From Ostrea edulis (lineage: Eukaryota): a stretch of 64,000 nt of DNA. Of the stretch, positions 440 through 33,798 are shown in pieces; within the stretch, counting starts at the first letter, position 1; every line of letters begins with the position of its first letter. The position numbers and the translations under genes are program-made. The DNA lies in assembly GCF_947568905.1 (NCBI RefSeq), contig NC_079172.1, positions 23,250,001-23,314,000 of the forward strand. The letters are read 5' to 3'. The notes below the pieces were generated by a model. That model saw only the letters and a program-made list of their open reading frames with translations, made no database searches and was not told where the DNA came from.

Positions 440-3400
440 CTACACGGCAATTAAGGCACTATTTGTAAATCGGCCCAACCTGATCATTCCGAAAAAGGAA
501 GCATTTGAAGTAAACACAGCTCTGACACCAGACGTAGAAATGTGTCTTATAGAAATGGTATCATTTCTGTTTATCCTAAAAATACCCATGGTAAAGCACG
601 ATGTTTTGTCTTCATCATGCAACATCATATTATTGGAGTAACACGCTAAAATTGCCTCGTTGTTTTTCATCACGTGGTAGCCTTGTGTTCCGTTACCTTT
701 CAACGTTATCTAAAACAGGAAGTGCAAAGATTTTAATGCAATACAGAACTAAATGCGTACAATTATATAGTATCTCCGCGATATGTTATCATTTGATAAA
801 GTTGAATCAATCTAAAACATTAAATTGAATATTGACAAAGGGAACACATAAGAATGATAGATCATATGAATTTTACTTAACGACAGTAGCGTATATATAT
901 CAGATCAACAGAAGACGGTATTTACCCCAATTTGTAATATAATTAAAATACATGTAGAGTCATTAGAGAATCTATCGCTAGAAGTATTGCATGACTGGTT
1001 TGAAAATATCTTATTGTTAAGCTGTTTGTAACAATTGATGACACAAAATAATGTTCTATATCTAAGCATAATGATATTAAAGGTATTTTTATCATGTTTT
1101 ACATAAAGCACAAATGAAAATTATGACAGTAAATACACTTGTTAAAATTTACAGATCTGTTGATATGATGTGTAAAGATACGACAGTAAATTCATAAACG
1201 ACCGGATCATTTTATAAACAATTGTACATTGGATAATAATTATTCATTGTCAGAAATACTAACGGAGTCGTCTCCCCATAGTAACACATGTGTCCACTAT
1301 GTGTAAGATATCCATTTTAAAAAAGAACATTAAAATAAATAATCTCTTGGAGTAGACTACTTATACAAGAATAAAGTGTTAGACGTCCTCTTATACAATA
1401 ACAAATAGAGGTACATCTGAATAAGTCTTTATTTAATACACTGTTATGTCTCAATCTAGTATGCATTACATTCCAGGAGCGTTCTCCACGCGAAAATAAG
1501 AAGGCAGGGGTGGTAATAGGAAATGTAAACTGTTTTTAAAAGAATTTAGAGAAGTTGATTGTCCTGTTTCCATCGGTACTGAATTCCATTCATCTATCGC
1601 TAACGGGGCAAAGGATGATTTATACATGCTTAATTTACATTTGGGATGGTATTATTTTTTGCGATTGTCTGGTGATATGATTTGATTCATATAAACGTAT
1701 ACTTCATACATTATTTTGAAGATAGTCTGGTACCAAGTTATGATAAATTTCCATATATGATTGATTTTAATTTGACCCTTCCTCTGACAAGAAGTGGTTC
1801 CTACCCAGTTTCGAAATAGATCCTCGTGATGCCAAGGGAGATCTGTCACTATCCTCGCGGCTGCTGATTGTAGTTTTTCTATTTTTTCCCTTCAGAATCT
1901 TGATTTAAACACCTACTCCATACTTCAGATGCATATTCCAACAGAGGTCTTATCAAAATAGTGTTTAAAAGTAATAAAGTTTTAGGACTGACATTAACTG
2001 TAAGTTTTTAAGCAATCCCAGTTTCTTAAAAGCATATGCATTGGTTAATATTGAACCAATCGACCAACTGAGATCGTGTGAACAAATAATACCTAGATGT
2101 TTGTGTGTTGACACAAAATCCAAGTTACTATTGTGAAATTCTAAACTGTGCAAGTCTACATTGTTTTTGGTACTAAATAAAACTCCACCAGATTTCGTTT
2201 TGCATAACTACCAAGTGCCAGCTTGATATGTTTTTAACTGGTATCTTTGGGATGAATACAACTTTTATGATATTGTTAGATTTCATATTTACTTAGAGTA
2301 ATGGACCAACAATTTCAATGAACATGCAGTCGTCCTGGTATTTTTTGTAGTTTAATATTATCTGTTATTTTCCCATTTTACTGAACAAGTCTTTTGTAAA
2401 GCATACTCATCCTACAGACTGTGTTCACTGACTACTATCATATATACTGTCTACAGACTGTGTTCACTGACTACTATCATATACTGTCTACAGACTGTGT
2501 TCACTGACTACTATCATACAGTGTCTACAGACTGTGTTCACTGACTACTATCATATAGTGTCTACAGACTGTGTTCACTGACTACTATCATATACTGTCT
2601 ATAGACTGTGTTCACTGACTACTATCATATATACTGTCTACAGACTGTGTTCACTGACTACTATCATATACTGTCTACAGACTGTGTTCACTGACTACTA
2701 TCATATACTGTCTACAGACTGTGTTCACTGACTACTACCACAGACTGTGTTCACTGACTATCATATGGTGTCTACAGACTGTATTCACTGACTACTATCA
2801 TATAGTGTCTACAGACTGTGTTCACTGACTACTATCATATACTGTCTACAGACTGTGTTCACTGACTACTATCATATACTGTCTACAGACTGTGTTCACT
2901 GACTACTATCATATACTGTCTATAGACTGTGTTCACTGACTACTATCATACAGTGTCTATAGACTGCGTTCACTGACTACTATCATATACTGTCTACAGA
3001 CTGTGTTCACTGACTACTATCATATACTGTCTACAGACTGTGTTCACTGACTACTATCATATACTGTTTACAGACTGTGTTCACTGACTATCATATGGTG
3101 TCTACAGACTGTGTTCACTGACTACTATCATATACTGTCTACAGACTGTGTTCACTGACTACTATCATATACTGTCTACAGACTGTGTTCACTGACTACT
3201 ATCATATACTGTCTACAGACTGTGTTCACTGACTATTATCATATACTGTCTACATACTGTGTTCACTGACTACAGACTGTGTTCACTGACTACTATCATA
3301 TACTGTCTATAGACTGTGTTCACTGACTACTATCATACAGTGTCTATAGACTGTGTTCAATGACTACTATCATATACTGTCTACAGACTGTGTTCACTGA

Positions 3401-6400: not shown

Positions 6401-9400
6401 AAAGGCATTAATTACTATGACGATTTTGACCACAACCTGGTAACAAAACCCCTACCCCTCAGATCATGATATTTACAATTCTGTAAAGGGCTATCTGCTC
6501 CTTCTAAATATCCATTTAGTTTCAATAGCATTAAAGGTGTTAATTAAATGTTTGCACATAAATACCATATGCCAAATTTGGCCCTGCCCTTGAGTTCGAA
6601 CCCCTACCCCGGGGATCATGGAATTCCCAATTTTGGTAGTGGCATTCCAGCTCTACATGACTATACATTTAGTTTTTCTTACGGATGTGCGGTGTAGAGA
6701 AAAGAAAAAGATTTTTTTTAAAAATTGGTAAAGTTTTGGCAGTTTTCCCCCGCCACATGTCATGTTTTCAAAGTATACAAAATTACATGCATTTTGTCTT
6801 CTTTATGCTTATAGTAATTAATTCTAAAAGTTCGTTCGCCAAAATTTTGCGATAATTAACCACAATACAGACTTAAATCTAAGTCCCGATTTCAAAAAAG
6901 TCTAGTTAATTAGGTAGGTAGTCACGTGGTACAGTGACGTCACATTTAAAGTAGTTTTAGGCATGAAAAGAATTAATTCTGCTGAAAAAATGAAAAAGTT
7001 TAGAAACAGGCCTCGGTAAGCAGGAGTCCTATAATATACAAATTTTGTCCGTCGTGTCCAAAAAATGTTTTATACCAAATATGAAAAGAATTAGAATCAA
7101 GAAAAAGTTTAAAATGTTCAATTGTTAACGCATGGCGACGGATGCAGGTTACCTAAAACACGCCGATATGTTGACACTGCGATAAGGGTTGTGCCAAATC
7201 CATGACACACTCCTATTTTTAGATTGTTTCCAGTATAATGAGCCAATAGAAGCACGCAAGATATGATGGTATAAAGATATGAAAATATTAAATTTTACAA
7301 ATTTCTGTCAAAAGTACCGACCTGTGAATAGAGAAGATATAGTCCATCTTGCTTCACTGTCAGGCATCCATTTCCAAAATCCAGTTCGAACTGTTTTTTT
7401 CTTTGCTTTTCCCTTAACTTAAAAAACCATTCTGCATATTCCCACTTGTGGAATGTTCCTGAAAGAGTTTCTGTAAATGAAGATCATGTATTTAGATGCA
7501 GTAATAAATAATTATTACATTATTATATTATTGTGACTTTGATACTTTGAGATATCATGAAATTTTATGTTCTTCAAAAATTATTTGAGATGAATAACTT
7601 TTCCCTGATAAATTCGTTTTGAAATTCAAGGTACACGTATAAGGTAATTGATCTTTCTCTTTCAAGGTACTGCACTCATTGAGCAGTGCTATAGTTTTAT
7701 CCATGCTTCTAATCTTGAAAAAAGTTCTGCAGTTTTGCTATAGCAATATACTATAAAATAATTGTATATTCATCCATAAAGTTCAAATTTTGCAAATCTT
7801 CAAATACATTCCAAAACGGTCTTGCTACAATTCAAAAACATGCACCTGCATTATTAAAAATAAAAACTAGCCATATTGAAAACAGAAACTAGCAGAACAA
7901 TAACTTGATGGATATCATGTACAGTATTTGATATTTAAGGCAAGTATTACCGTCGTTTTGGTAACCACCTCTCCCAGATGAATGCAAAGCAGGAAGCACA
8001 ACAGTCTAGAAAAATAAGGGTGACTAAAATTGTCACGTTCGTTTATTTCTTTTTTTATCTCTCAGGACCATTTTCAAATCCAGCTATATGTAAGTGCACT
8101 CTCCTGTATCCCTGCACACAAAAGCCATGCATTGCTAAAACTAACTTGCATATAGAGAAAACTTAGAAATAAGGGTGGAATTACCATTTGGTCTATGCTC
8201 TCCGTCATACCCAACCACCTGCAGCCCAGTTAACTACAAAAGGAAATATGACTAGATTTACCGTAAGCCCAGTGGTCAAATTCTATTCCCTCATTGTTTA
8301 TTTCGCCCTCAATCTGGATAGCTTCTACAGCTGTCTACAATTAGAATGAGTGGCATGAAGTCTTCTTGTTGGAACTTTGTCGTTATCTAATTCCTCATAA
8401 GAATTCATATTCGTAGACGGTGTTCGCTTGGAAAAGAAGCAAGTGCATTGATATGTGATGCAGGACGCTGGGTGAGTGGTGTATCTGGGATTGATAAACA
8501 ATGAAAAAAAAGTTCAAAGATAAAAATATTCATCATACGTGCGTAAGAATATTTTGTCTTTTATATGCCAGTGAAAGAACAAAGTCTATTGTTCGCAGAT
8601 TAAACGTCATATGATTTTGTTACAGCACACCACGAATATGAGAGCACTCCACCCATCTTTCACAAAGCAAGTTAAATTAATCACTACTCGTTATCTTCAC
8701 TTTGTTCAACTAGATACCAAGTATTAATGATTCATAAACACGAAATGACGGAGTTGTATATGTAGTTTCCTACCCTAGAACTTTTAAACTAAAAAAAAGG
8801 GGGGGGGGAGAAAAACCATGAAAATAATGCAAATGTGTGTGTGTATGTGTGAAAAATATAGAACTGAGGACCGCACCCATGAAGAATTGTGTAACAGGAA
8901 CTTGACTAAGGCTACGCCCAATACCAGGATGATATAATACATGTCAAGGCTATACCCAAGGCAAAGTTAAAATGAACTAGATTAATAAACAAGGTAAACA
9001 AACTACGATTTTAATCGTCAGGCATATATTTGCTTTGTTTAATTTTTAGGCTGCATTCCAGTTTTTCCCCACTCATGTAGAGACACTACCACCTTTAGTT
9101 GTGAGCTTAATCATTGATGACATTGCGATTTACTCCTTGAATTTTCTATTTTAAGTCGAGAAACCAATATTTAAAGAACTGAGTACCGTATGGCAAATAA
9201 ATGTATCTCTTCCAACGATTTGTTTTTGATAATATATAATATACTACAACAATTTTGATCGTCATGATTGCTCAAAGTATCATCTAAAATGCTATGATTT
9301 CATGCCATTAGAAAAGACTTATATTTACCCCTGGGAAAATCAGGATAACTTTCACCCCCTGTCCCTTCTATATGAACAGCATCAATCTTAAAGATAATGA

Positions 9401-12400
9401 GAATACATGTTATATTAGTACAAATACAAATTGACGCTTTCCACGTAGAAAAAAGACAAACGAGTATTAGTTATGAGACCCTTAGTTATCGCCCCTGTTT
9501 AGAAGAAATTAATCTGGTCTTGGCGAAGCTTTACGGTGGTGTCTAAATGTCGTTATTGCATGCATATAATGTATATATACACACATGTATATGGTCTACA
9601 TAAAATTTCAGATTGATTTAAAGAATTCCAACTTTTGGAATAACTTACAATTCTTGCCAATACAATTCATATCAAACAAGTCCATATTAGGAAAATTAAG
9701 TAAACAATTTTCAGTGTGCGTCCTTTGTCCATCCAGTGCTTCATATACAATGTAATTTTATATATGTGATAAAATGATACCTCGTGAATTTCTGAGATCC
9801 CACATCCTTGTGTTTATAATATATTCAAATTGAACAAAGCATTAAAGATTATACTTTCTGACGCAAAAATAGTTAAAAATTTTATTTCTTTATGTCAAGT
9901 GGCATTCCTTGACCTCTTTAAACAAGTAATAGTCTTTGGTAAACATTTCATTGGTTTCTAGAATTTACCAGTTTGTATGGGGTTTGGGTTGTTGGTGTAG
10001 CTTTATATCTATATATATGTTGGTGAATATCAATCAAATATTAAGGTGGATCCCTCCTCATGTGATGTCATATGTTTTTGCAATTAAAAAAAATAAAATA
10101 AATTAAACTTTGCACATGATAAAAATATATCTTTCAAAGGAATTGTATGAAATGGATAAAACTATTTGTAAACTATTGATAGTGACAAAGTTTATATTTT
10201 CCTAAGATAATTAATTATTTATAATTTCAAAAATGTTGTCATGAGCAATAACTCCTATGCTGGCATTTCCACTATAGTATATCTAATACAATGATTTTCG
10301 TAATATCCACTATTGATTTATGCACATTTATAAATTAGCAATTTTCTAAACAGTTGACGCTAATTTTATCATTCTGTTTTAGCGTGATTTACTGATCAAT
10401 GTTAACCTACACTTCAAACTCTGTTGTTTTGTATGTCTACGATCTTAAAAAAAAAGGTGACAACATTCACATTTTCTTTGGTTATTAATTAAATTAAACT
10501 ATATTGAGTGGAAATTAATACACTTTTTCTACTTCCAATCATTATAAGTGATAAGTCACGATGGTGGAACTACCTTAAAGGAGTTTCTCAATAAAAGAGC
10601 TCAAATCAAATCAATAGTAGTGAATGGAAAACTATATATATATATATATATATATATAAGAGAGAGAGAGAGAATGAATGTGATGTTCATTTTGCATAAT
10701 AATGAACACACTCCCTCCAAAATTATTTGAGGTATCATCAAACATCGCATTCTAATATTGTGTGCCGCCATCTTTGATTTGATGTGTAATTTTCATTGAT
10801 ATTGGCGTTCATTCCCAATGGGCTTCTATTGGGGAAAAAATGTTAAATGCATTGAAAAGATATGAAATGTAAATTATTCTTTAGTACAGGTTATATTTTA
10901 AATCGAAATGAGATCAAATGGAAATTAATCTTTTAAACATGAAAATATTTCAGCCATATTGTCGGCTAATGGCTTATCAGTATTATAAACTCGATTTCTA
11001 ACATAAATAATTTGTTATAGGTAATAGAAATGGTTATTACATGATACAACAAAGTTTGAAATTAATAGGGAACAGTAAACTGGCAAATGCTTAAATCGCT
11101 GATGTTTAAGAGTTACTGAAATTATTTTCTATTCAAATATTTTTTTATTGTCTTCACTTTCAAGACCCCCGAAACTAGAAAAAAAAAATAATACTCAGAA
11201 TGAAAACATATTCAATTACTTTTCGTTGATTGCATTTTCTAACCGATTGATCCTCAAATTATAACGTATCGATAAATCAACGTCAACCGTGAATAAAAAT
11301 AAATCTTACTGTAACTTGTACCATAGATTTTGCAGACAGAACATTTAGAACCCATGCTTCAAACTTTATTGCTTAGTAATGAAGTGTAAATCTAAGGTAA
11401 GAAGCTCACATAATTTAAGCAAGAAGATATGAGAGTGACGAATTTTACGCTGTAAATGTACAACAATCCGTTCACAAAAACAGTTTATCCATGCATATCT
11501 ACCAGTGATAAAAATATGCTGTTTCAACGTATTTCATTTCTTGATTAACCTCTCAACATAACATAAGACGTACATATATGATATAGATTATAAATATAAG
11601 ATATACATGCTTAGTTTGATGGTAATATGAGGGTTATAAAATTAATGGAAGCATAATAGATTTTTTAACCCAGTGATTCAATTATTTTATTCCCCCATGA
11701 TATCAGTAACCTAGACATTTATTCCTTAACGACAATTTATAAATTATATCATGCATTAGTTGCCTTGGGCACCTATATTAAATTGCATTTTCTATTCTAT
11801 AAATTTCTCTGCATTTTCTGAAGAAAAAAACCCATTTTTACACGCCTTAAACAAGATACCTAAAAGAAACTAGATGACCAGAAATTTCAGTTTTAAAAAT
11901 GTATTCATAAAAATTTCTGCTTGGTTTTGAATTGCATGTAGATGAATATCAAAAAATCATAATAACTCCAATTTTCGAATGCAAAAAACTAATTACTTCC
12001 GTTAACACACCCGATCTTCGGCGATGAACTACAGGTAAATTAGTGGATTAGTTTTATCAAAGCGAGTGAAAACCATACTTCTCATGAGGTAAGAATTAAA
12101 TATTCGGGAAACGCATACAGTTCACCACTATTAATTCTAAAATGTTCATTAAAACATTATTATGTTCGAGTATCCAGGTTTCCATTTAATATTTTGCTGC
12201 AAACAAAACTTCTTTACCTATACTAGACACAGGTACAACATATATTTAGATATAGGACTTGACCAGGTGAGCAGGTCAAGAAAGTCAGTATGACACAGAG
12301 GGTGTATATGTCTAAGCCACGGTTTGTTCTGATCAACTTAGAGATAATTTTTTTATCTACCAGGAAGTTTATTTTCATTGGTTAAAAATTTTGACCAATT

Positions 12401-26900: not shown

Positions 26901-29900
26901 CTAAGAGAATAAAAGGGCACCGAAGAAGGTTTTGTCATGACTTATTGATACTGGTGTGTTTCGTGTAAGTATTTTGATCTGTACGATGTCACCTTTGTTT
27001 AAATAATGCAACCCCATCATATTGCAAGTCTTCTCCTTTGCATTGAAAAACTCCGAAATCTCGCTTGGTTGGTAATTGTCAATACTGTCAGCGCAGTGAA
27101 AAACCCTTTTATCCGAAACAAAAAGCCCGAAGTATTCTCTGGGATCTTTTGTAAACTTCTCTATCTGAAAAACAACGATAGTCGAAAGATAATGCAGAAA
27201 ACTCGAAACCAATGCAAGAATCTCTTTCAATCTAATACGCAACTTTCTAGGTATCAGCTCTTCTGGGAAAGAGGTACGTTCAGTGTTTTGTTGAACGCTT
27301 GGGTGGGTACAAGATAAACTATATACTACAGATTAGCTATGTAAATACGGATAAAAGTAATGAAAGTGTAAATTTTGTTTATATCAGCCGTTGATATACA
27401 TTAAACTGACCATATCAAGAATAATATTTTATTGAATTAGGCCATTAAATTGAAAATGAAATTATTTTTTATTTCCTCTTCTGTACGAGTGATATTTTAA
27501 TCAAAGAAAAAAAAAGTGATTATCGATTTTTGTTTGAGTTATCTTATTATTTAATACCAATAAACTTACTAATATTGTGTGTCCCTGCAGGTTGGGTGGT
27601 TGTATGATGTCTGATAATCGGCCTTTAGGCAATATATGAAGGCAGCGATAAACATTTGTACCCACCGCGTGTGGACGATAGTATGTTGTGCGTCTCACTG
27701 TGCGTAAGAGTTCCACAAAGGGAAAGAACTATTGGGCAACTCGGAAATTGCGTATGCAATTTCAATCTAATCAAATCAATCTCTTTCAGAGAAAACTCAC
27801 ACCTCTGTCATACTATGTTTTAAACATGTAAAATCTTATCCGATAATAAATTCCAGAAAAAAATCCTCATGTTTAAACCAATTTGACAAATTTTTCTGAC
27901 TCCGTGATATTGACTTCATATTTACCTAATAATATTCCTGACATGATATCAACAGAAAATTCAATTTCGTCCCCCTCTCAGAAATCAACACCAATCTGTT
28001 CCTTGCTATATACTTCGTGGATATTTTCTTTCAGTTAATCAATTAGACTTTTTGAATTTCATATCAGTAAAATTTTAACCTGATGAGACACTGTGATGCC
28101 TTATTCCTGAGAAAAGATACTGTGAGGAATCTAACATGTGACAGACGGAGAGACGGGTTGTATACTGGTAAAGATAGACACATATTCACTACGAACCTTA
28201 ATACACATGTACATGTTTGTGTCCGGGGCATTAAAGCGAAGAGCATGAAAGGTAGGACGCAGACAACATAGCTATCCAAGAGGGACATGTGAATTAAGAA
28301 TTAGGATGGAGGAGTACAATGGAAGCCTTTCAAATTTTGATGACAAAGGTATACTCAAAATATTTTATTACCTGGACATACAAAAGATAGAGTCCTGCCT
28401 GAAGCACTTCAAATGCGGATCTGTCTGTATTCTGTTTCATTATCATGTTTAGATGTTTATTTTTCATCCACTCAGCCTCTTGAAAATATGGAATAAGCAT
28501 GTTTTTTTCTGTAAAGAATGAGAGATTCAAAAGTTAGGCAGAGCAAATACCGATATCATTTATCTGCTTTACATTGTAGCTCTATTCATTCCGTAAAACA
28601 CAACAATTTTACCATTCAAGAATTACAGATAAATCCTAATAGATCCCATTAAAGCATTTATTACCTTACATGTACACCTGCAGTGAAGATAATAAACATA
28701 GCCTTTCCAAAAACCAAAATTTTAAAACGAAAAAAAAAAAGTATTTCGTTTCGAAAACATGAAAATAACCAGGCTCTGGAGGGAATTCAAAGCTGTAAGT
28801 GAAATGCTTGCTTCTCGTATACAGAGAACAAGTTTCCATATATTTCCTTAGTTTCAACCTGTTTACATGTCAAATACAATGTAGAGAAATGTCTGTGGAA
28901 TTATTTGATTTGTGCAAAGATATGTTGAGTTTGAAATGTGTAGATATGCACAGTCCCAACTATTTCATTAATGCTTTGTTCATAACAGCCCCTGAAAAAT
29001 TAATACCTGAACTCCAAAATGTTTTATTTGTAGGACAGTAAACGGTGTTTTCATCAAGAATGCAATCTACAAAACATAAAAAAAATCATCTTTGGTGGAT
29101 TATTGCTGAAAATTAATGTCTACACTTACATAAATAAAAAAAAGTTCAAGATAAAATAACTAAATCGGCAATACAATCATATCGTTTCCTTCAGAAGTAT
29201 TCAACTCATCATGAATTCAAAACAAGGTTTAAACCACTGGCAAGATGTTGAGAGGTAAAATAAACGACGTTTTTCGATGACACTCTTCTCGCAATTGATC
29301 TTTCGTAAATTAATTCATTTACATCCTTTGATTTTAATGTCAGCTTTTGTAAAACATACCTCTGGTATTCGGTGGACTGGTTACAAAATGAGCAGCTCTG
29401 ATGTTTCCCTATGGTTAAATCAAAAGAAAATGGGCATGAAAAAGGAAACGTTTTATTGAAATATTGTTATTAAGAATGAACAAAAGAAAATATAGGCACG
29501 AAAATTGAAACGTTTTATTGTTATTCAGAATGAGTAGAAGTATGATGTAATTACATCATGTCAGGGACGCCTCTTAATGCAGCCCATGATGGTAAAACAA
29601 ATACCTCTTCAGATGCAGTGTGAAAAAGATAATATGATTTCTTATTGAAAATCAGCCGATTTACCTTCAGCATGTCTGATTTACCCGAAACAGGACATTA
29701 TGCCTGATAGAGATTAAAGTAAAAATTAACTTACAGGAGCACCTTGTACACCTGGGCTTCCTGAAAAAGATCAAGCGTGAACAATATTAGTTCCAGAGGA
29801 CCATAGACAGAGACGGGTTTATCAGCAGCTCGAGGCAGTCATTCTTAACTTGACCAAATCGAAAATTTGCATATTAGGTCACGTGAAAGAGTTTTCTAAA

Positions 29901-33476: not shown

Positions 33477-33798
33477 CAGGGCCGTAAATTAACCTTCAAT
33501 TTGGAGGAGGCAGGAAATTAGGCGGGGGTCTGGGGGCCGCCCAGGCCCCCAGACGTTGAGCACATTTTGTGCACACTGAACACGTTTCGTGCAAAATCCT
33601 TGATTCTAGGGCCTTCTAAGATGTTACTTGACTAACTCATTCTAAAAGAAAGATTTGGAATGCTTTTTAAGGGAGGTATCATGTTCTTAGTTATTGGAAA
33701 CAACATAAATTCTAATGAACTTTAAATTTTAATTTTTTTTGGCTCAAAAGTTGGAGGAGGCAGCTGCCTCCTCCGCCTCCATGTAATTTACGGCCCTG
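33477..33798. mobile_element. MITE with 15-bp TIRs (hAT-like)
   Basis: cagggccgtaaatta ... taatttacggccctg; TSD not clean. Confidence 0.75.

What the first reader, a model, noticed from the sequence alone, without database searches (positions are those of the whole stretch)
7951..9386. Mutually exclusive exon cassette inside a TNF ligand gene, swapping strand A and the following loop
Seen: exon 2 ends in phase 0 and the 137-nt TNF-domain exon starts in phase 1. Between them are four well-flanked 0->1 exons (58, 73, 49, 55 nt) sharing the motif xx[AG]h[HQ]xxG (IDAVHIEG, VEAIQIEG, LTGLQVVG, LPALHSSG). They all end in G|gtaa. V4 and V6 share the same acceptor layout (TAGTCA-7nt-TTTTNTAG). Each alone yields a full ORF (888-912 nt). 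V3, V4 or V6 read in phase 1 after another variant gives a premature stop. The paralogues TNF-C and TNF-D have a single such exon. Established: the AA'' loop of TRAIL and RANKL contacts receptor, and a 2-aa splice difference switches EDA-A1/A2 between EDAR and XEDAR. Inference: one gene makes four or more ligands with different receptor-facing loops, a Dscam-style design that I do not recall being described for a TNF ligand.
Basis: partly seen in the sequence, partly recalled or inferred. Interest (0 to 1): 0.92.

Follow-up and report, generated by a model that had tools for sequence, protein, structure and literature searches.

The report
Four-way exon switch in oyster TNF ligand
A flat-oyster TNF-family cytokine gene carries four tandem alternative exons, only one of which enters each mRNA, that rewrite the first strand and adjoining loop of the signalling domain; the design is conserved across oysters and, in related form, in pearl oysters and mussels, and I found no paper describing it.

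Summary
The window is Ostrea edulis. The minus-strand gene is LOC125660281, an EDA/Eiger-like TNF ligand.

Four tandem exons lie between exon 2 and the next TNF-domain exon:
- A: 9386-9329
- B: 8334-8262
- C: 8233-8185
- D: 8005-7951

All four run phase 0 to phase 1. Of the 32 combinations tested, only single inclusion gives a full ORF.

RefSeq already models eight isoforms, which are exactly these four exons times two tandem acceptors (7470 and 7458, with or without ETLS).

The same four exon types, the dual acceptor and a 28-nt B-to-C intron recur in Saccostrea and Crassostrea/Magallana. Pinctada has three tandem copies in its genome. Mytilus isoform models show at least three alternatives.

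Spliced RNA contigs from Crassostrea-type samples contain B alone, C alone and a non-productive A+D.

AlphaFold models place the variable part on strand A and the short strand after it. In the nearest solved fold, EDA-A1, the equivalent segment is the main EDAR-contact patch.

I also found three conserved intronic elements (D0, D1, D2) whose competing pairing could choose A versus B, C or D.

Receptor switching and the RNA switch are inferred, not shown. No paper describing this was found. The scan holds no note of this cassette on other DNA.

The parts
14325..14606 (-). Exon 1: start codon, cytoplasmic tail, transmembrane segment, start of stalk (94 codons, ends in phase 0)
   Evidence: identical to residues 1-94 of RefSeq isoforms
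13529..13678 (-). Exon 2: basic stalk with an REKR furin-like motif (50 codons, ends in phase 0)
13480..13492 (-). D0: intronic element 37 nt after exon 2, complementary to D1. Partly decayed in O. edulis (about 10 bp core); strong in Saccostrea and Magallana
9355..9462 (-). O. edulis-specific hairpin pairing upstream intron with the acceptor and first ~30 nt of exon A (-30 kcal/mol, z -4.3). Not conserved in other oysters
9329..9386 (-). Variant exon A (58 nt). Its peptide is identical in Ostrea and both Saccostrea species. It has counterparts in Pinctada and Mytilus
9263..9281 (-). D1: 19-nt intronic element (GATACTTTGAGCAATCATG) 48 nt after exon A, identical in four oyster species. Candidate selector
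8262..8334 (-). Variant exon B (73 nt; 70 nt in Saccostrea and C. angulata, 55 nt inferred from the 18-residue C. virginica segment; always 3n+1)
8234..8261 (-). 28-nt B-to-C intron, too short to be spliced out. The length is identical in four species of three genera
8185..8233 (-). Variant exon C (49 nt)
8126..8131 (-). TGCATG inside a 13-nt block of the C-to-D intron that is conserved in the three oyster loci aligned. It matches the Rbfox-type motif as I recall it
   Evidence: the motif identity is from memory, not tested
7951..8005 (-). Variant exon D (55 nt)
7541..7559 (-). D2: 19-nt intronic element 89 nt before the next exon, complementary to D1 (-25 kcal/mol). Candidate docking site
7322..7470 (-). 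Next TNF-domain exon with two tandem acceptors (7470 gives 149 nt with ETLS; 7458 gives 137 nt)
   Evidence: the dual acceptor is also present in Pinctada
440..709 (-). Last exon: the rest of the TNF domain and the stop codon

Best explanation
**Shown.**
- This is a real, conserved cluster of four tandem-duplicated, mutually exclusive exons in an EDA/Eiger-like TNF ligand gene of Ostrea edulis (LOC125660281).
- Each mRNA takes one of exons A to D between exon 2 and the next TNF-domain exon.
- A tandem acceptor on that next exon adds or omits four residues, giving eight proteins.
- The proteins differ only in strand A, the short strand after it, and the loop up to the conserved tryptophan.

**How exclusion is enforced (inferred from the sequence).**
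- B and C are 28 nt apart, too close to be spliced to each other.
- All four exons are 3n+1 nt long. Skipping all of them, or including more than one, shifts the frame and gives a stop codon at least 92 nt before the last junction. By the usual distance rule such mRNAs should be degraded.

**How the choice is made (inferred).**
- A selector just after exon A (D1) can pair with a docking element just before the next exon (D2). This loops out B, C and D and favours A.
- D1 can instead pair with a similar element just after exon 2 (D0). This loops out A and favours B, C or D.

**What it does (inferred).** In EDA-A1 the equivalent segment is the main EDAR-contact patch. The eight ligands therefore most likely differ in receptor binding.
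For: **Isoform models**
- RefSeq isoforms X1-X8 are exactly 4 exons times 2 acceptors.
- The same four exon types and the dual acceptor are modelled in Saccostrea cucullata, Crassostrea virginica, C. gigas and C. angulata.

**Genomes**
- The loci of S. cucullata, S. echinata and C. angulata keep the exon order, the G|GTAA donors, the 3n+1 lengths and the 28-nt B-to-C spacing.
- S. echinata keeps all four exons even though only one isoform is annotated there.

**Conservation**
- The exon A peptide is 19/19 identical between Ostrea and Saccostrea, while the whole protein is about 59% identical.
- Pooled synonymous divergence is 0.27-0.46 in the variant exons. It is above 1 or saturated in the constitutive exons, a pattern I recall as typical of regulated alternative exons.

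**RNA**
- Contigs from Crassostrea-type samples are spliced E1-E2-B-E4-E5 and E1-E2-C-E4-E5.

**Beyond oysters**
- Pinctada has three tandem 3n+1 copies.
- Mytilus isoforms carry at least three alternatives plus a four-residue acceptor variant.

**Frame**
- Frame analysis of all 32 combinations.

**Structure**
- Models of the A and D forms have pLDDT 87 and 89.5. Strand A lies inside the variable exon in both.
- The nearest folds are EDA-A1 and Eiger.
- EDA residues 256-265 contact EDAR. Anchored on the VH..G motif and the conserved Trp, they align with the variable segment.

**Intronic RNA elements**
- D1 and D2 are each other's best partner in three species at -22 to -25 kcal/mol. The next-best D2 hit is about -15 in all three species, but in S. 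cucullata and C. angulata D1 also pairs with D0 about as strongly (-29.5 and -24.4).
- D1 and D2 are also present in S. echinata.
- None of 2000 shuffles reaches the observed energy; z is -7.4.
- D0:D1 pairing is -17 to -45 kcal/mol.
Against: - **No O. edulis reads.** I could not inspect any O. edulis RNA reads. For this species the evidence is RefSeq models plus conservation.
- **Combinatorial models.** Gnomon may have combined exons and acceptors combinatorially, so not all eight products need exist.
- **Leaky exclusion.** An A+D transcript exists. Older C. virginica models contain A+C and C+D read in shifted frames.
- **Weak covariation.** D0, D1 and D2 are almost invariant, so there is essentially one covarying pair. 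D0 is weak in O. edulis itself. Nothing equivalent stood out in Pinctada.
- **Untested binding.** Receptor contact is by analogy. For Eiger, a docking model places the receptor on the CD and GH loops and strand D, not on this segment (PMC6684607).
- **B and D evolve fast.** Between Ostrea or Saccostrea and Magallana, dN is about equal to dS in exon D (both comparisons) and in exon B between Saccostrea and Magallana; in exon B between Ostrea and Magallana dN is about half of dS.
Confidence: 0.85

Rival explanations
1. The cluster is real, but what it varies is trimer assembly rather than receptor choice. On this view the four strand-A versions decide which protomers can co-assemble (homo- versus heterotrimers), or set ligand stability or shedding.
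For: - The models place the [HQ]xxG core of the exon in strand A. From my own knowledge of the TNF fold, strand A belongs to the inner sheet that packs in the trimer.
- The Eiger receptor-docking model does not use this segment.
- Two cysteines sit just before the variable exon.
Against: - The most variable residues follow the conserved G. They map to the outward-facing short strand that contacts EDAR in EDA-A1.
- The strand-A core pattern ([AG]h[HQ]xxG) is kept in all four variants.
Confidence: 0.2
2. Only exon A, the ancestral and most conserved version, makes the working ligand. On this view B, C and D mainly serve regulated unproductive or low-level splicing that tunes the amount of ligand.
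For: - Exon A has dN of 0 to 0.035. B and D reach dN of 0.3-0.44 against Magallana.
- Only A has clear counterparts in Pinctada and Mytilus.
- Non-productive A+D transcripts exist.
Against: - Every single-inclusion mRNA is fully in frame.
- B, C and D keep their open frames, 3n+1 lengths and splice sites in four genomes, and B does so despite indels.
- Full-length spliced RNA contigs carry B alone and C alone (proteins P0018, P0019, P0021).
- The D form folds as confidently as the A form.
Confidence: 0.1
3. The isoforms are an annotation artefact. On this view the extra exons are decaying remnants of a partial gene duplication that gene predictors string together.
For: RefSeq models are automatic, and I had no read-level evidence for O. 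edulis.
Against: - The four exon types are orthologous one to one across three genera, with conserved splice sites.
- Independent RNA contigs contain them.
- The flanking intronic elements are conserved.
- No other part of the gene is duplicated in the window.
Confidence: 0.03

Closest known systems
EDA-A1 / EDA-A2 (vertebrate ectodysplasin splice variants)
   Same: - It is the nearest solved fold (TM-score 0.79 normalised on the model and 0.86-0.90 on the EDA chain).
- It is also a TNF ligand in which a small splice difference inside the TNF domain changes receptor specificity (PMC9918506).
- EDA's main EDAR patch (residues 256-265) is the counterpart of the oyster variable segment.
   Different: - EDA uses one alternative splice choice that adds or removes two residues at the end of strand C.
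- The oyster gene replaces 16-24 residues at strand A with one of four duplicated exons, and adds a four-residue acceptor choice.
- Oyster receptor specificity is untested.
Eiger (arthropod TNF ligand)
   Same: - RefSeq names the Saccostrea orthologue 'eiger-like'.
- It is the second-closest family of solved folds after EDA (6i50, 6zt0).
- It has the same type II membrane layout.
   Different: - From my own knowledge, no mutually exclusive exon cluster is described for eiger.
- The Eiger receptor model uses other loops.
Mutually exclusive exon clusters governed by docking and selector RNA pairing (as summarised in PMC6071210; from memory: Dscam1, 14-3-3 zeta, human ATE1)
   Same: - Tandem-duplicated homologous exons with one chosen per mRNA.
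- Conserved intronic elements that are all complementary to one partner.
- A selector after the variable exon and a docking site before the next constitutive exon.
   Different: - There are only four variants.
- Only exon A has a recognisable selector.
- The competitor (D0) lies upstream of exon A, so the proposed switch is A versus the rest, not one selector per exon.
- It has not been tested experimentally.
Sterically exclusive exon pairs (alpha-tropomyosin exons 2 and 3; from memory)
   Same: Two adjacent alternative exons lie too close for the intron between them to be removed. Here that intron is 28 nt, and the likely branch region TAGTCAT starts 8 nt after the B donor.
   Different: This mechanism covers only the B/C pair. 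The other pairs rely on frame and, as inferred, on RNA pairing.
Other mutually exclusive exons reported in bivalves (alternative oxidase in C. virginica, PMC5589949; coq-2, PMC7434440)
   Same: Duplicated-exon substitution events are already reported in molluscs.
   Different: Those concern metabolic enzymes and exon pairs. None concerns a cytokine or a four-exon cluster.

Membership tests
TNF superfamily ligand | TNF homology domain recognised by the Pfam model PF00229 above its curated threshold | tested here: met
   40.7-40.8 bits against a cut-off of 23 for all four variant types
TNF superfamily ligand | Jelly-roll fold matching solved TNF ligands | tested here: met
   Models have pLDDT 87 and 89.5. 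Top matches are EDA-A1/A2, Eiger and APRIL
TNF superfamily ligand | Type II membrane protein: N-terminal tail, one hydrophobic span, stalk, C-terminal domain | tested here: met
   By inspection of exon 1 (a hydrophobic run of about 25 residues) and the basic stalk with REKR. No predictor was run
TNF superfamily ligand | Homotrimer that binds cysteine-rich TNF receptors | not testable with these tools
   Needs biochemistry
Mutually exclusive (tandem-duplicated) exon cluster | Adjacent exons that are homologous, share phase and have similar length | tested here: met
   Four exons of 49-73 nt, all phase 0 to 1, sharing the [AG]h[HQ]xxG core
Mutually exclusive (tandem-duplicated) exon cluster | Mature productive mRNAs contain exactly one of them | tested here: met
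   RefSeq models in five species and RNA contigs with B alone and C alone. One A+D contig is out of frame. O. edulis reads were not seen
Mutually exclusive (tandem-duplicated) exon cluster | A mechanism that prevents joint inclusion | tested here: met
   A conserved 28-nt B-to-C intron. A frame shift with an early stop in all 24 combinations that include no variant or several variants
Docking/selector competing RNA structures | Conserved intronic elements complementary to a shared partner | tested here: met
   D0 and D2 both pair with D1 in four species. D1:D2 is the top-ranked duplex for D2 in the three species scanned; for D1 it ranks first in O. edulis and C. angulata and second to D0 in S. 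cucullata
Docking/selector competing RNA structures | Pairing supported by compensatory changes or mutagenesis | tested here: inconclusive
   The cores are invariant. There is one covarying position next to the core, and lineage-specific complementary flanks in C. angulata. No experiment was possible
Dscam-type hypervariable gene | Many variants in several clusters giving hundreds to thousands of isoforms | tested here: not met
   There is one cluster of four exons. The motif scan finds no further copies in the intron or the window
EDA-type splice switch of receptor specificity | Isoforms bind different receptors | not testable with these tools
   There is only positional homology of the variable segment to the EDAR-contact patch

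The most novel reading that the evidence does not exclude
- Bivalves encode part of their TNF ligand repertoire by splicing rather than by gene number.
- The system would be an ancient cluster, with exon A predating the split of oysters, pearl oysters and mussels, combined with a conserved four-residue acceptor choice.
- It would yield up to eight ligands whose counterpart of the EDA receptor saddle differs.
- Each ligand would address a different subset of the expanded bivalve TNF receptors.
- The choice would be set by a three-element competing RNA switch (D0, D1, D2) and tissue factors.
Probability: 0.4. Interest if true: 0.85.

Novelty: new variant of a known kind. Interest (0 to 1): 0.72.

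Why it matters
- **A new way to diversify a TNF ligand.** From my knowledge, TNF ligands are known to diversify by gene duplication and by minor splice changes such as EDA-A1/A2. I did not find a cluster of mutually exclusive exons that rewrites a surface shown to bind receptor in the closest solved homologue.
- **Relevance to bivalve immunity.** As I recall, bivalves have greatly expanded TNF and TNF-receptor families, and oysters are farmed animals that suffer mass mortalities. A single gene giving eight ligand forms offers a tractable way to ask how invertebrate cytokine specificity is generated.
- **A small model for RNA-structure-guided exon choice.** The conserved 19-nt complementary elements make this cluster a compact model outside arthropods and vertebrates.
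- **An annotation lesson.** The isoforms have been in RefSeq for some years, apparently without comment. Double-inclusion transcripts have produced odd RefSeq protein models in C. virginica.

Tried and rejected
- **Extra exon copies.** I looked for further copies of the cassette exon, or a second copy of the 137/149-nt exon, in the window. None was found.
- **The O. edulis hairpin.** I tested whether the inverted repeat upstream of exon A is a conserved docking stem. It folds well but is absent from Saccostrea and C. angulata. It is a species-specific feature at most.
- **D1 and D2 in Pinctada.** No match with up to 4 mismatches was found, and no duplex stood out.
- **Known RNA families.** Rfam gave no hits over 7000-14700.
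- **O. edulis transcripts.** The protein collection held only genomic read-through ORFs (P0002, P0034).
- **Loci not fetched.** The C. virginica and Mytilus genomic loci could not be fetched. Four exact-protein look-ups failed.
- **Sequence-only PDB search.** It did not reach strand A. A profile search and fold search were needed.
- **Literature.** Seven full-text searches found no description of this cassette. An eighth, on genome-wide surveys of alternative splicing in Crassostrea, was judged from titles and abstracts only. Subscription journals are not covered.
Full report
**Identity and gene model**

A search with the exon 1 region returned a 100% match to 'uncharacterized protein LOC125660281 isoform X3 [Ostrea edulis]', which carries Pfam PF00229. 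The gene lies on the minus strand:

| Part | Window coordinates | Note |
|---|---|---|
| Exon 1 | 14606-14325 | 94 codons: tail, membrane span, start of stalk |
| Exon 2 | 13678-13529 | 50 codons: basic stalk with REKR; ends in phase 0 |
| Variable exon | one of A to D | see below |
| Next exon | 7470 or 7458 to 7322 | two tandem acceptors |
| Last exon | 709-440 | rest of the domain and stop codon |

The window contains no N.

The four exons are A 9386-9329 (58 nt), B 8334-8262 (73 nt), C 8233-8185 (49 nt) and D 8005-7951 (55 nt).
- All follow pyrimidine-rich AG acceptors, end G|GTAA and are 3n+1 nt long.
- C and D share the TAGTCA-7nt-TTTTNTAG acceptor.
- Intron lengths are 4142, 994, 28, 179 and 480 nt from exon 2 onward.
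- I built all 16 subsets with both acceptors. Only the eight single-inclusion mRNAs are open. The other 24 stop at least 92 nt before the last junction, which fits the usual rule for nonsense-mediated decay.
- A scan of the whole window, both strands, for splice-flanked open exons with the core motif finds these four (plus one alternative-donor extension of exon B), and otherwise only one 77-nt and one 47-nt hit, neither 3n+1, and three nested candidates just past the stop codon.

- Exon D in phase 1 has no internal stop; the stop is in the next exon.
- The next exon also has a 149-nt form.
- The statement about the paralogues was not tested. One paralogue lies at about 26.9-28.5 kb on the minus strand.

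**The isoforms are already modelled**

The RefSeq cluster holds isoforms X1-X8 of 295-307 residues. Aligned, they are identical except for one of the four exon peptides and the presence or absence of ETLS. That is exactly 4 exons times 2 acceptors. X9 and X10 differ only at the N terminus.

**Conservation**

A full-length search found orthologues with many isoforms:
- Saccostrea cucullata, 'eiger-like', X1-X8.
- Crassostrea virginica LOC111136382, up to X15.
- C. gigas LOC105343082, X1-X8.
- C. angulata LOC128179810, X1-X10.

Their variable regions fall into the same four types, one to one, each with or without E[TN]LS.

The genomic loci of S. cucullata (L001), C. angulata (L002) and S. echinata (L007) show the same order, the same donors and acceptors, and a B-to-C intron of exactly 28 nt. 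S. echinata keeps all four exons although only one isoform is annotated there.

Rates of change differ between the exon classes:
- The exon A peptide is identical in Ostrea and both Saccostrea species and differs at one residue in Magallana. The whole protein is only 50-59% identical.
- Exon B changes length (73 nt, 70 nt, and 55 nt inferred for C. virginica) but always stays 3n+1.
- Pooled synonymous divergence is 0.27-0.46 in the variant exons. It is above 1 or saturated in the constitutive exons. I recall this pattern as typical of regulated alternative exons.
- Between Ostrea or Saccostrea and Magallana, dN is about equal to dS in exon D in both comparisons and in exon B for Saccostrea; for exon B between Ostrea and Magallana, dN is about half of dS.

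**RNA evidence**

Logan contigs about 1 kb long, aligned to the C. angulata locus, are fully spliced:
- L004 is E1-E2-B-E4(short)-E5.
- L005 is E1-E2-C-E4(long)-E5.
- L003 is E1-E2-A-D-E4-E5, a frame-shifted double inclusion.

Exclusion is therefore strong but not absolute. Some older C. virginica RefSeq models (X2, X3) are ORFs read through A+C or C+D in shifted frames. I found no O. edulis transcript contigs.

**Beyond oysters**

- The nearest non-oyster relative is Mytilus californianus LOC127737276, with at least 11 isoforms. Its isoforms and those of other Mytilus species carry at least three alternative strand-A segments, a four-residue acceptor variant (DNFA) and an optional 12-residue exon.
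- The Pinctada imbricata locus (L006) has three tandem 3n+1 candidate exons with GTAA donors and the same dual acceptor.
- Exon A has clear counterparts in Pinctada and Mytilus. B, C and D look oyster-specific.
- A scallop gene (at least 17 isoforms) shows the four-residue acceptor variant. Its strand-A exons were not examined.

**Where the variable part sits**

AlphaFold models were made of the A form (pLDDT 87.2) and the D form (pLDDT 89.5).
- Both give the same jelly roll.
- The [HQ]xxG core forms strand A. A short strand follows (DSSP marks two to three residues there). The four optional residues lie in the loop before the conserved Trp.
- The best solved matches are EDA-A1/A2 (TM-score 0.75-0.79 normalised on the model, 0.85-0.90 on the target) and Spodoptera Eiger.
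- In the EDA-A1/EDAR complex, the second of three charged contact patches is described as contributing most of the contacts (the paper's word is "electronic"). It uses Gln256, Gln261, Asp265 and Asp273. Ser258, Ala259 and Gln261 of strand A'' form a saddle that holds the receptor (PMC9918506).
- The EDA chain shown reads [21 protein letters not shown], so those residues begin right after the VHLQG motif.
- Anchored on that motif and on the Trp, EDA 256-265 corresponds to the part of the oyster exon that differs most between variants. The optional four residues fall between the counterparts of Asp265 and Asp273. This is positional homology, not a binding test.
- The Eiger paper's docking model uses other loops.
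- The EDA-A1/A2 difference itself lies at the end of strand C, a different site from this cassette.

**How the choice may be made**

Cross-species comparison of the introns leaves few conserved blocks. Two of them are complementary 19-mers:
- D1 (GATACTTTGAGCAATCATG, 9281-9263) lies 48 nt after exon A.
- D2 (7559-7541) lies 89 nt before the next exon.

Support for pairing:
- In O. edulis, S. cucullata and C. angulata, D2's best partner anywhere between exon 2 and the next exon is D1, at -22 to -25 kcal/mol. The next best is about -15.
- Both elements are also present in S. echinata.
- None of 2000 shuffles reaches the observed energy; z is -7.4.
- D1 has a second partner, D0, about 37-80 nt after exon 2. 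Pairing energy is -17 to -19 kcal/mol in O. edulis, -29 to -33 in Saccostrea and about -44 in C. angulata, where the complementarity extends into non-conserved flanks.

My reading:
- D0 and D2 resemble each other and compete for D1.
- D1:D2 loops out B, C and D and brings the exon A donor to the next acceptor.
- D0:D1 loops out exon A.
- This matches the docking/selector principle for such clusters (abstract of PMC6071210).
- It rests on conservation and predicted energies, with essentially one covarying pair.

Other features:
- O. edulis has a weak D0 but a private hairpin over the exon A acceptor (-30 kcal/mol, z -4.3). That hairpin is absent from the other oysters.
- B versus C is settled sterically by the 28-nt intron.
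- A TGCATG conserved in the three loci aligned sits between C and D. From memory it matches the Rbfox-type motif.

**Novelty**

Seven full-text searches found nothing on this cassette. They covered the gene and protein accessions; TNF with oyster or bivalve and mutually exclusive splicing; CgTNF and splicing; and surveys of mutually exclusive exons in molluscs. An eighth search, on genome-wide surveys of alternative splicing in Crassostrea, was judged from titles and abstracts only.

Mutually exclusive exons are known in bivalve enzymes (PMC5589949, PMC7434440). The isoforms exist in RefSeq, so the data are public but apparently undescribed. Subscription journals could not be searched.

I class this as a new variant of a known kind.

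**Earlier scan notes**

Two other notes on this window were checked.
- The 28-nt spacing note holds and is conserved across species.
- The inverted-copy note is real in O. edulis but not conserved.

The scan's other mutually-exclusive-exon notes for this genome concern other genes.

Noticed in passing
window 12353-12406 (-): A deep-intronic block about 1.1 kb after exon 2 is conserved in Ostrea, Saccostrea and Magallana. It holds two inverted CCAAT/ATTGG boxes and a GAAATAAACTTCCTGGT run. It looks more like a transcriptional element than an RNA docking site.
   Followed up: partly
window 15193-15417 (-): RefSeq isoforms X9 and X10 start in an upstream ORF here and join the middle of exon 1. 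This removes the cytoplasmic tail and the membrane span. It may be an alternative promoter or an annotation artefact.
   Followed up: no
L005:531-689, compared with L002:9890-10033: In Crassostrea-type RNA contigs the 137/149-nt exon occurs in strongly divergent versions: about 80% nucleotide identity with a 15-nt insertion, while the neighbouring exons are 97-100% identical. Several distinct peptides appear in P0023, P0030, P0074 and P0078. This could be extreme allelic variation, gene conversion or an unassembled alternative exon.
   Followed up: partly
proteins P0094 and P0225 (Mercenaria mercenaria LOC123553845 X4 and X3): The hard-clam relative has two isoforms that are identical up to the YAQ motif and then differ throughout. 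This suggests alternative last exons that swap the C-terminal half of the TNF domain.
   Followed up: no
window 1320-2207 (-): ORF fragments that look to me like a retroelement insertion (not checked against any library) lie inside the 6.6-kb intron before the last exon.
   Followed up: no
window 26904-28533 (-): A paralogous TNF ligand gene lies here, with exons containing GLYLLYVQ and FFGALL motifs. A possible strand-A exon (LLQIEG) lies near 33545.
   Followed up: partly
proteins P0032, P0033 (older C. virginica models X2, X3): These RefSeq proteins read one cassette exon in a shifted frame and the next in the correct frame. They derive from double-inclusion transcripts and are probably not real proteins.
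   Followed up: partly
window 9355-9462 (-): A hairpin private to O. edulis covers the exon A acceptor (-30 kcal/mol, z -4.3). It might replace the weakened D0 element in this species.
   Followed up: partly
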